In this document: positions 17,501-18,221 of the stretch, piece after piece
How positions within the stretch are numbered: the first letter of the stretch is position 1
Layout of the letters: every line of letters starts with the position of its first letter
Assembly (NCBI RefSeq): GCF_006345805.1
Contig: NC_043012.1
Span: 25,234,001 to 25,298,000 of the forward strand
Length of the DNA: 64,000 nt
Direction: 5' to 3'
From: Octopus sinensis
Taxonomy: Eukaryota
Program-made: the position numbers and the translations under genes
The notes under the pieces: model-generated
Seen by the model: the letters and a program-made list of their open reading frames with translations, nothing else
The model's database searches: none
What the model was told of the DNA's origin: nothing

Positions 17501-17655
17501 TTAACTATATATATATATTATATATATAATTTATATATAGAGGGCATTATTATACATAGATGCCACACGCTAAGAGGGACAAAAAGTCATTTCTACCAAA
17601 AATTTTACTGATCCCACCGAATGCAATCTTTCAAAGCAGGACATTTAAAAAATAT

Positions 17656-17704
17656 AGACTTGTATCACCTGTGATTTCGTACTTACGTACTCCTCAGCAA
17701 GCCT
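17656..17704 (-). ncRNA. Canonical type I hammerhead ribozyme (left copy)
   Basis: AGGCUUG-CUGAGGA-GUAC-GUAA-GUAC-GAAA-UCAC-AG-GUGA-UA-CAAGUCU: 7-bp stem I, 4-bp stem II with GNRA loop, closed stem III, AUA cleavage triplet. Confidence 0.9.
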
Positions 17705-18111
17705 GAACGTATCATAAATAAACGACCCTGTCTCGTCGAAGCCAAGCAGCTAACTGTTCAACGTCAACGAAGCACATGGGGCAGTTTACATATATTACAT
17801 CCGGTAAATGGCATGCTTCTTCGAATTGCATTTCGGTTGAGAAAGTTTTTTCGGAATAAAATTATTTAGCAATTAAGGACAACTTCTTAATAAGGAATCT
17901 TAATAAGAAATTATCAGGTAGATAGCGTGAAAAACCTCATAAGAGAAAAATTTCGAAAATAATTCTTTCTTATTGAACATATTAATTTATATATAGAGGG
18001 CATTATTATACATAGATGCCACACGCTAAGAGGGACAAAAAGTCATTTCTACCAAAAATTTTACTAATCCCACCGAATGCAATCTTTCAAAGCAAGACAT
18101 TTAAAAAATAT

Positions 18112-18160
18112 AGACTTGTATCACCTGTGATTTCGTACTTACGTACTCCTCAGCAAGCCT
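18112..18160 (-). ncRNA. Canonical type I hammerhead ribozyme (right copy)
   Basis: Identical to 17656-17704, 456 bp away. Confidence 0.9.
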
Positions 18161-18184
18161 GAACGTATCATAAATAAACGACCC

Positions 18185-18221
<37 letters not shown>

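What the first reader, a model, noticed from the sequence alone, without database searches (positions are those of the whole stretch)
17527..18189. Retrozyme-like element: twin canonical hammerhead ribozymes 456 nt apart, predicted to release a circularisable RNA
Seen: a 207-bp block is repeated with period 456 bp (2 mismatches), giving about 1.45 units of a 456-bp monomer. Each copy carries the same minus-strand motif AGGCUUG-CUGAGGA-GUAC-GUAA-GUAC-GAAA-UCAC-AG-GUGA-UA^CAAGUCU, with every conserved core nucleotide, three paired stems and a GNRA loop II. Upstream GAUA can also pair with downstream UAUU to extend stem I around an asymmetric bulge. There is no long ORF. Established: type I HHRs cleave after NUH to give 5'-OH and 2',3'-cyclic phosphate ends. 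Metazoan non-LTR retrozymes are non-coding tandem repeats with type I HHRs that yield circular RNAs, and Penelope-like elements carry HHRs in tandem pseudo-LTRs. Inference: a minus-strand transcript cuts at 18119/18118 and 17663/17662 and releases a 456-nt monomer. The greater-than-unit-length insert fits reverse transcription around a circular template. I do not know of such a family described in cephalopods, but I cannot search.
Basis: partly seen in the sequence, partly recalled or inferred. Interest (0 to 1): 0.92.

Follow-up and report, generated by a model that had tools for sequence, protein, structure and literature searches.

The report
Retrozyme-like repeat with two hammerhead ribozymes
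A 663-bp non-coding insert in a TA microsatellite carries two identical self-cleaving hammerhead ribozyme motifs 456 nt apart, so it looks like one more member of the known animal "retrozyme" class of small circular-RNA retroelements rather than a new kind of element.

Summary
A 207-nt block is repeated at 456-nt spacing with 2 mismatches, at 17527-17733 and 17983-18189. Each copy carries the same complete type I hammerhead on the minus strand: helix I 7 bp, helix II 4 bp with a GUAA loop, helix III 4 bp with a CAGG loop, and an intact core. These are the only two such motifs in the window, and random sequence gave none.

The predicted 456-nt monomer folds far better than shuffles (z about -5 to -6) and better than 36 control segments, and the effect is much weaker on the other strand. 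The insert is non-coding and 34% GC. It has no poly(A), PBS or PPT, and it splits a (TA)n tract. Its 3' end lies on a TA-rich stretch of the unit.

All of this fits a metazoan non-LTR retrozyme, a class linked to Penelope-like elements.

Caveats:
- Rfam's type I model scores only 10.8 bits against a cut-off of 34.
- No second copy or relative was found anywhere.
- No reverse transcriptase was found in the 40 reading frames tested.
- The host taxon could not be verified.
- Cleavage, circular RNA and rolling-circle copying remain inferences.

Verdict: a real feature, a new member of a known kind, and of modest interest.

The parts
17527..18189 (-). Whole insert, 663 bp, or 1.45 units of a 456-bp monomer, arranged as block A, block B, block A
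   Evidence: Direct repeat family D3; boundaries read; 34.5% GC; no long ORF
17983..18189 (-). Block A, upstream copy (207 nt), containing hammerhead 1
17734..17982 (-). Block B, a unique 249-nt non-coding spacer containing a near-perfect internal hairpin
   Evidence: sequence; fold
17527..17733 (-). Block A, downstream copy (207 nt), containing hammerhead 2; differs from the upstream copy at 17639 and 17610
18112..18160 (-). Hammerhead 1, type I: helix I 7 bp, CUGAGGA, helix II GUAC/GUAC with GUAA loop, GAA, helix III AUCA/UGAU with CAGG loop, A17; predicted cut between 18119 and 18118
   Evidence: Descriptor scan, reading, cleavage position
17656..17704 (-). Hammerhead 2, identical in sequence to hammerhead 1; predicted cut between 17663 and 17662
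17663..18118 (-). Predicted 456-nt monomer released by double cleavage (5' C at 18118, 3' A at 17663); candidate circular RNA
   Evidence: Linear MFE -125.2 kcal/mol against -92.6 +/- 5.4 for shuffles, z -6.1. Circular MFE -119.4, z -4.8, 67% paired. 36 control segments from the window have mean z -0.19 and minimum -2.81. The plus strand gives only z -1.8 to -2.2
18166..18169 (-). GAUA, 5' strand of the possible outer extension of helix I of hammerhead 1; it pairs with UAUU at 18107-18110. The equivalents for hammerhead 2 are 17710-17713 and 17651-17654
   Evidence: Forms in the constrained fold; not a proven tertiary contact
18190..18232 (.). (TA)n tract abutting the 5' end of the insert (5' in the ribozyme sense)
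   Evidence: TRF row 18189-18232
17506..17526 (.). TA-rich tract abutting the 3' end of the insert. The unit itself ends here in CUAUAUAUAAAUUA, so the junction is ambiguous by a few bases (microhomology)

Best explanation
This is a genomic copy of a small non-autonomous retroelement of the metazoan non-LTR retrozyme kind, the class now regarded as derived from and mobilised by Penelope-like elements.

Proposed mechanism:
1. A minus-strand transcript crossing the locus folds two type I hammerheads. They may act singly, or as a double hammerhead through their near-palindromic helix III segments.
2. The ribozymes cut after A18119 and A17663. [quoted passage not shown]
3. A host RtcB-type ligase closes the monomer into a highly base-paired 456-nt circle.
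4. New copies arise when the reverse transcriptase of an autonomous element copies a ligated circle or an uncleaved multimer. Priming comes from a nicked (TA)n target that anneals to the unit's own UAUAUAUAAAUUA stretch. Synthesis runs for more than one unit length.

Shown here: the repeat, the two complete motifs, the strand-specific RNA structure, the lack of coding capacity, the split TA tract and the microhomology at the 3' junction.

Inferred: transcription, cleavage, ligation, the identity of the reverse transcriptase, and whether this locus is active or a dead copy.
For: - Repeat geometry: 207-nt blocks 456 nt apart.
- Two identical complete type I hammerheads, the only ones in the window.
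- No motif of this quality in 200 shuffles or in 98 Mb of random sequence.
- 13 chance matches to the linear core plus helix III pattern turned up in the metagenome and prokaryote collections. None had more than 4 helix I pairs or more than 1 helix II pair, against 7 and 4 here.
- Both ribozymes are intact across their cleavage sites, so the template was not a cleaved linear monomer.
- The monomer RNA is exceptionally structured on the ribozyme strand only.
- GC is 34%. There is no ORF above 48 aa, and no poly(A), purine tract or PBS.
- No ribozyme family matches the opposite strand.
- The insert splits a (TA)n tract, and only 5.1% of the window is such tract.
- Published defining features match: type I hammerheads in 150-450 bp low-GC repeats that yield highly self-paired circular RNAs closed by RtcB (PMC7229834). 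Family consensus lengths range from 51 to 972 bp, and 75% of families reach at most 7 units (preprint 10.64898/2026.07.22.740005).
- Penelope-like elements insert as partial tandems and favour microsatellites (PMC8557442).
Against: - Rfam RF00163 gives 10.8 bits against a gathering score of 34, with a mis-registered alignment. Nothing appears at gathering or at E<=10 on 901 nt.
- The hammerhead fold is not the thermodynamic optimum: -9.6 against -11.5 kcal/mol for 49 nt, and -16.4 against -21.4 for 93 nt. Helix III as a hairpin is worth only -0.6 kcal/mol.
- The two copies are identical, so there is no covariation evidence.
- There is only one locus in 64 kb, and no relative in any collection.
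- No reverse transcriptase or GIY-YIG domain appeared among the 40 reading frames tested.
- 1.45 units falls short of the at least two consecutive tandem units required by the preprint's pipeline, and TRF does not call the repeat.
- There are no expression data.
Confidence: 0.65

Rival explanations
1. This is the remnant of an autonomous Penelope-like element. The two blocks are its pseudo-LTRs and the coding region has been deleted, or it is a tandem of 5'-truncated ends. The unit would then have no independent life as a retrozyme.
For: The A-B-A layout resembles pLTR-body-pLTR. Penelope-like elements carry hammerheads in their pLTRs, insert as partial tandems and favour microsatellites (PMC4209133; PMC8557442). 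Xenopus retrozyme families are sister groups to PLE pLTRs.
Against: Only 249 non-coding bp lie between the blocks, with no ORF. The ribozyme is not the min-HHR described for metazoan PLEs, which has helix II of 7-8 bp, helix I of 4-5 bp and no helix III. Here the helices are 4, 7 and 4 bp. No RT or GIY-YIG was found in the frames tested. The strong fold of the whole 456-nt unit is expected for a circular RNA element, not for a deletion product. The boundary with the main explanation is soft, because retrozymes are proposed to derive from pLTRs.
Confidence: 0.15
2. The duplication is not real at this locus. Either it is an assembly artefact, with a single block A in the true genome, or it is a collapsed longer tandem array (a hammerhead satellite).
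For: The sequence is AT-rich and microsatellite-laden (5.1% perfect TA tracts), which is hard to assemble. PMC8557442 notes that complex PLE tandem and inverted insertions often cause assembly problems. Raw reads were not available.
Against: The two blocks differ at two positions. Both junctions read cleanly, with unique sequence B between the blocks. Partial tandems are the expected natural form.
Confidence: 0.1
3. The motif is a chance hammerhead-like sequence inside an ordinary local duplication, with no ribozyme function or retroelement history.
For: The Rfam model does not recognise it. The active fold is not the MFE. My random-sequence control bounds the rate only at below about 3 per 100 Mb of strand, so a scan of several gigabases could still turn up chance hits. 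There is one independent occurrence, since the two copies are duplicates.
Against: All invariant core positions are present, with three helices of 7, 4 and 4 bp in compact form. None occurred in shuffles. The motif coincides with three independent features that chance does not predict: it sits in the duplicated part so that two copies flank one unit, the unit is an outlier in RNA structure on that strand only, and the whole insert splits a TA tract.
Confidence: 0.05

Closest known systems
Metazoan non-LTR retrozymes (Cervera & de la Pena 2020, PMC7229834), for example the 350-390 bp repeats of the mussel Mytilus galloprovincialis
   Same: - A type I hammerhead once per unit.
- Head-to-tail repeats of a few hundred bp.
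- Low GC and non-coding, with no LTR, PBS or PPT.
- The monomer is predicted to be highly self-paired.
- The ribozyme lies on one polarity only.
   Different: - Only 1.45 units are present, rather than a clear multimer.
- The 456-nt unit is larger than the 170-400 nt circles reported for invertebrates, although it lies within the 51-972 bp range of family consensus lengths in the 2026 preprint.
- Helix III has 4 bp, against the usual 1-2 bp.
- Copy number, expression and circularity are unknown here.
Hammerheads in the pseudo-LTRs of Penelope-like elements (Cervera & de la Pena 2014, PMC4209133; Craig et al. 2021, PMC8557442)
   Same: Direct terminal repeats that each carry a type I hammerhead, partial-tandem insertion, and insertion into microsatellites with no discernible target-site duplication.
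   Different: There is no RT/GIY-YIG ORF between the repeats. The ribozyme is not the minimal PLE variant, which has a long helix II, a short helix I and no helix III.
Newt satellite 2 and Schistosoma Sm-alpha hammerhead repeats (my own knowledge; also cited in PMC4209133 and PMC7229834)
   Same: Type I hammerheads in short non-coding genomic repeats. Double-hammerhead cleavage through a palindromic helix III is possible, and the self-duplex of the helix III segment is -13.2 kcal/mol here.
   Different: Those families are present in thousands of copies or in long arrays and are recognised by Rfam RF00163. This locus is a lone dimer-like insert and is not recognised.
Plant LTR retrozymes (Cervera et al. 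2016, PMC4918200)
   Same: Two ribozyme-bearing direct repeats flank a non-coding centre, and the proposed life cycle runs through a circular RNA.
   Different: Plant elements have type III hammerheads, LTRs of about 350 bp, a PBS, a PPT and 4-bp target-site duplications. None of these is present here.
Viroid-like and deltavirus-like circular RNAs with hammerheads
   Same: A small circular RNA processed by a hammerhead.
   Different: Those agents carry ribozymes in both polarities and are not encoded in the host genome, and the delta-like agents encode an antigen. Here the ribozyme is on one strand only and nothing matches the other strand. There is no ORF, and the sequence is genomic DNA.

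Membership tests
Hammerhead ribozyme, type I | Invariant core: C3 U4 G5 A6 N7 G8 A9, G12 A13 A14, the A15.1-U16.1 pair, and H17 that is not G | tested here: met
   CUGAGGA ... GAA A...U A in both copies
Hammerhead ribozyme, type I | Three helices around the core, with helix I open and helices II and III closed by loops | tested here: met
   Helix I 7 bp (open), helix II 4 bp with GUAA, helix III 4 bp with CAGG
Hammerhead ribozyme, type I | Score at or above the Rfam RF00163 gathering threshold | tested here: not met
   10.8 bits against 34, E 6.9 on 86 nt. The alignment matches the core but skips helix III and mispairs helix I. No hit. The model's helix III is a single pair with about 6 inserted nt, so a 4-bp helix III fits it badly.
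Hammerhead ribozyme, type I | Helices supported by compensatory changes among homologues | not testable with these tools
   Only two identical copies exist, and no relatives were found
Hammerhead ribozyme, type I | Loop 1 / loop 2 tertiary contact | tested here: inconclusive
   There is a GNRA loop II, and an internal loop after 7 bp of helix I followed by GAUA/UAUU. The conserved contact nucleotides were not compared.
Hammerhead ribozyme, type I | Site-specific self-cleavage | not testable with these tools
   Needs in vitro transcription
Metazoan non-LTR retrozyme | At least two type I hammerheads in direct orientation, one unit apart, in a head-to-tail repeat of roughly 150-450 bp (up to 972 bp) | tested here: met
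   Two motifs 456 nt apart. However, there are only 1.45 units and TRF does not call a tandem repeat.
Metazoan non-LTR retrozyme | Non-coding, low GC, and no LTR, PBS or PPT | tested here: met
Metazoan non-LTR retrozyme | Monomer RNA highly self-paired | tested here: met
   z -4.7 to -6.1 and 67% paired, against controls with a minimum of -2.8
Metazoan non-LTR retrozyme | Multi-copy dispersed family in the genome | not testable with these tools
   There is no second copy in the 64-kb window, and the source genome is not searchable here
Metazoan non-LTR retrozyme | Expressed as linear and circular monomer RNA | not testable with these tools
   No transcriptome access
Metazoan non-LTR retrozyme | Co-occurrence with autonomous Penelope-like elements in the same genome | tested here: inconclusive
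   No RT or GIY-YIG appeared among 40 frames of the window, but 64 kb says little about a whole genome
Penelope-like element (autonomous) | An RT plus GIY-YIG ORF between the pseudo-LTRs | tested here: not met
   249 non-coding bp lie between the blocks
Penelope-like element (autonomous) | The minimal hammerhead typical of metazoan PLEs | tested here: not met
   Helix lengths of 7, 4 and 4 bp, against the published helix I of 4-5 bp, helix II of 7-8 bp and no helix III
Plant-type LTR retrozyme | Type III hammerhead, PBS, PPT and a 4-bp target-site duplication | tested here: not met
   Type I topology. There is no purine run of 10 or more and no PBS-like sequence. The flanks are a TA repeat.

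The most novel reading that the evidence does not exclude
Its hammerhead differs from the canonical metazoan type I in having a 4-bp near-palindromic helix III, and this makes the family invisible to Rfam-based annotation. Its integration is primed by microhomology between (TA)n microsatellites and a TA-rich stretch of a 456-nt circular RNA. That would tie retrozyme mobilisation to the microsatellite-targeting endonuclease of Penelope-like elements.
Probability: 0.3. Interest if true: 0.45.

Novelty: new member of a known kind. Interest (0 to 1): 0.3.

Why it matters
If the unit proves to be multi-copy and expressed, it would add a lineage to the known range of animal retrozymes. It would also supply a hammerhead variant that standard Rfam annotation misses, so counts such as the 235 hammerheads reported for the giant squid could be underestimates.

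The clean junctions are useful too. The insert splits a TA tract and ends on the unit's own TA-rich stretch. That makes a testable case for how these elements are primed at their targets, a step the literature still leaves open.

It does not change the picture of what retrozymes are.

Tried and rejected
- **Rfam.** At gathering thresholds over the whole window there were no hits. At E<=10 over 901 nt there were only TA-hairpin microRNA look-alikes, which I reject as artefacts of the (TA)n tract. On 86 nt, RF00163 gave 10.8 bits.
- **More copies in the window.** blastn with word size 7 found only low-complexity noise.
- **Relatives by exact pattern.** The core plus helix II pattern found nothing in metagenome or viral contigs. 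The core plus helix III pattern gave 7 metagenome and 6 prokaryote-genome matches, none with more than 4 helix I pairs or more than 1 helix II pair. I reject these as chance.
- **Copies via spurious ORFs.** The 48-aa ORF found no candidates in the 5.8-billion protein index. The 64-aa frame against 1.84 billion representatives gave two weak hits (E 7.9e-08 and 5.7e-04) to 750- and 1074-aa proteins matched in 12 and 5 short stretches, which I take to be unrelated. Flanking ORFs looked up by identity were not on record.
- **Host identification.**
  - The mariner transposase has relatives of 90% identity or more in fish, 87% in a mantis shrimp and 63% in Octopus. It has spread horizontally and is uninformative.
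  - Contigs L001 and L002 share only the mariner with the window.
  - The SINE-like ORF gave no hits.
  - Sequence strings were not found in papers.
  - No tRNA genes were found.
- **Reverse transcriptase or endonuclease in the window.** Pfam was run on 40 frames, and only the mariner domains matched above their curated cut-offs.
- **Plant-type LTR retrozyme.** Rejected: wrong hammerhead type, and no PBS or PPT.
- **Viroid- or delta-like agent.** Rejected: one polarity only, no ORF, and the sequence is genomic.

Full report
**1. The observation**

The minus strand of 17527-18189 reads as block A (207 nt), block B (249 nt), then block A again. The repeat finder reports the two A blocks at 17527-17733 and 17983-18189, with spacing 456 and 99% identity. 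The only differences are T/C at 18095/17639 and at 18066/17610.

A descriptor scan of both strands of the window required CUGANGA, GAA, a non-G at position 17 and three helices. It returns exactly two hits, at 18160..18112 and 17704..17656 on the minus strand. Helix I has 7 bp and helix II has 4 bp. The scan counts 5 pairs in helix III. A 2-nt loop cannot close, so helix III is really 4 bp (A-U, U-A, C-G, A-U) with a CAGG loop. The predicted scissile bonds are 18119/18118 and 17663/17662.

**2. Is it more than chance?**

- A loose form of the descriptor expects 0.115 hits per dinucleotide-shuffled window.
- The strict form (helices of at least 6, 4 and 4 bp) gave none in 200 shuffles. It also gave none in 98 Mb of first-order Markov sequence with the window's composition.
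- That bounds the rate at roughly below 3 per 100 Mb of strand. On its own this would not exclude a few chance hits in a multi-gigabase genome.
- A natural control points the same way. The linear pattern of core plus helix III occurs 13 times in the metagenome and prokaryote collections. None of those matches has more than 4 helix I pairs or more than 1 helix II pair, against 7 and 4 here.
- The two motifs here are one independent event, because they are duplicates.
- What makes chance implausible is the conjunction with the features described in sections 4 and 5.

**3. The Infernal test fails, and why**

Rfam finds nothing at gathering thresholds and does not list a hammerhead at E<=10 over 901 nt. 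On an 86-nt slice, RF00163 scores 10.8 bits against a gathering score of 34.

The printed alignment matches CUGA.GAGU...ACGAAA. It then gives helix III zero length and pairs GGCUUG with ACAGGU. The model's helix III is a single pair with about six inserted bases.

This agrees with the published description of canonical metazoan type I hammerheads: helix I 6 bp, helix II 4 bp, and helix III 1-2 bp with a small palindromic loop (PMC4209133). The specialist papers search with structure descriptors (RNAmotif, rnabob) rather than with Rfam. I therefore record the Rfam criterion as not met, and I treat it as a limit of the model rather than as evidence against the motif.

**4. RNA structure**

- *Monomer, ribozyme strand.* The cleavage-to-cleavage monomer (18118->17663, 456 nt) folds to -125.2 kcal/mol, against -92.6 +/- 5.4 for shuffles (z -6.1). 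As a circle it folds to -119.4 kcal/mol (z -4.8) with 67% of bases paired.
- *Complementary strand.* It gives only z -2.2 as a linear RNA and z -1.8 as a circle.
- *Controls.* 36 microsatellite-free 456-nt control segments from the same window have mean z -0.19, SD 1.2 and minimum -2.81. The element scored -4.7 in that run.
- A strand-specific, outlying fold is what the literature reports for retrozyme circles, described as 'highly self-paired'.

Caveats on the ribozyme fold itself:
- The hammerhead conformation is not the local optimum. It scores -9.6 against -11.5 kcal/mol over 49 nt, and -16.4 against -21.4 over 93 nt.
- Helix III as a hairpin is worth only -0.6 kcal/mol. Two helix III segments can pair with each other at -13.2 kcal/mol. 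A double-hammerhead mode in multimeric transcripts, as in newt and viroid RNAs, is therefore at least as plausible as single-motif cleavage.

**5. Boundaries and context**

In the ribozyme sense, the insert is preceded by (TA)n at 18190-18232 and followed by a TA-rich tract at 17506-17526. With the insert removed, the two tracts join into one tract of about 64 bp. Perfect (TA)n tracts of 12 bp or more cover 5.1% of the window. Insertion into one is therefore not rare by chance, but it is what Penelope-like elements are reported to prefer.

The unit's own sequence at the 3' end of the insert is CUAUAUAUAAAUUA, so the 3' junction shows microhomology with the target. No target-site duplication can be read in a dinucleotide repeat. 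There is no poly(A), no purine run of 10 or more, and no PBS-like sequence.

Beyond the TA tracts lie unrelated repeats:
- Upstream is an unidentified remnant at 18233-18990 with no Pfam match.
- Downstream is an interspersed repeat of about 190 bp at 17320-17505. Its second copy at 1546-1725 has no hammerhead element next to it.

The element has no ORF above 48 aa with a start codon, and its GC is 34%.

**6. Search for relatives**

- There is no other copy of the unit in the window.
- Pattern scans of the metagenome, viral and prokaryote collections found no relative.
- Attempts to reach eukaryotic assemblies through spurious ORFs of the element or its flanks failed.
- No reverse transcriptase or GIY-YIG domain was found in 40 reading frames of the window.
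- The host could not be identified. The only identifiable gene is a decayed mariner whose close relatives occur in fish, a mantis shrimp and Octopus. The 'cephalopod' attribution is unverified.

**7. Comparison with known families**

Metazoan non-LTR retrozymes are defined as follows (PMC7229834):
- type I hammerheads in short, low-GC, non-coding head-to-tail repeats;
- no LTR, PBS or PPT;
- expression as self-paired circular RNAs that RtcB can close;
- proposed mobilisation by Penelope-like elements.

A 2026 preprint adds that family consensus lengths range from 51 to 972 bp, that 75% of families reach at most 7 units, and that Xenopus families are sister groups to PLE pseudo-LTRs.

Every feature testable on one locus is met. 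Copy number, expression and partner element are untestable here.

The ribozyme is not the minimal variant found in metazoan PLEs, and there is no coding region, so this is not an autonomous PLE. It is not a plant-type LTR retrozyme, which has a type III ribozyme, a PBS and a PPT. It is not a viroid-like or delta-like agent, because the ribozyme is on one polarity only and the sequence is genomic.

**8. Mechanism**

The most likely sequence is transcription of the minus strand, double cleavage, ligation to a 456-nt circle, and target-primed reverse transcription from a nicked TA tract annealed to the unit's TA-rich stretch, running 1.45 unit lengths.

Both genomic hammerheads are intact across their cleavage sites, so the template was a ligated circle or an uncleaved multimer, not a cleaved monomer. 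The data cannot distinguish those two.

The 1% divergence between the blocks suggests that the insertion is not very recent.

**9. Verdict**

It is a new member of a known kind, with two minor peculiarities: a 4-bp near-palindromic helix III that Rfam misses, and a unit at the large end of the range. Tandem type I hammerhead repeats are documented across animal phyla, including molluscs, and hammerhead hits are already listed for a cephalopod genome (PMC6962438). A specialist would not be surprised. Interest 0.3.

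Noticed in passing
window 24080-25377 (-): Decayed mariner-type transposon. 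The HTH_48 and Transposase_1 domains lie in different frames, which implies at least two frameshifts. It is about 92% identical in DNA to contigs of two ENA metagenome assemblies. The closest protein cluster contains proteins of the fish Sphaeramia orbicularis, and the closest named hits are 87% in a mantis shrimp and 63% in Octopus. This looks like a horizontally spreading element.
   Followed up: partly
window 48924-49575, 33126-33536, 37548-37892, 12946-13245, 18900-18990: Several copies of a SINE-like interspersed repeat (shared core ...GGGACTGAACCCGGAACCATGTGGTT...CCACTCCTGCGCC), which often ends directly in a (TA)n tract. No tRNA gene was called by ARAGORN, and no protein or literature match was found.
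   Followed up: partly
window 17320-17505 and 1546-1725 (85% identical); also 60311-60373: Another short interspersed repeat of about 190 bp (GTTAATCCAAACA...GGAAGACAGAGGAAAAAA). In both full copies it starts right after a TA run and is followed by a microsatellite. It is unidentified.
   Followed up: no
whole window; e.g. 2545-3193, 10394-11076, 22960-24163, 41923-43323: Extreme microsatellite load. There are 149 perfect (TA)n tracts of 12 bp or more, covering 5.1% of the window, plus stretches several hundred bp long whose ORFs translate as homopolymer runs (H, T, I, N, L, Y). These look like trinucleotide arrays but were not checked with a repeat finder. They create many spurious ORFs and spurious low-complexity Pfam hits.
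   Followed up: partly
window 18180-18239: The (TA)n tract upstream of the element is bracketed by an 8-9 nt imperfect inverted repeat (GACCCTGTC ... ACAGGATC on the plus strand, family I21). One arm is the first bases of the element. It is too short to interpret. PLEs are reported to often carry an inverted truncated copy next to the upstream repeat.
   Followed up: no
window 18174-18249: Weak Rfam microRNA-family matches (mir-297, mir-568, mir-1277 and others, 20-34 bits against gathering scores of 70-100). They are hairpins formed by the TA microsatellite, not microRNA genes.
   Followed up: yes
window 18233-18990 (-) and 20725-20994 (-): Stop-free frames with protein-like composition (for example ...[38 protein letters not shown]...) that look like remnants of a transposase. 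Pfam gives no match, so they remain unidentified.
   Followed up: partly
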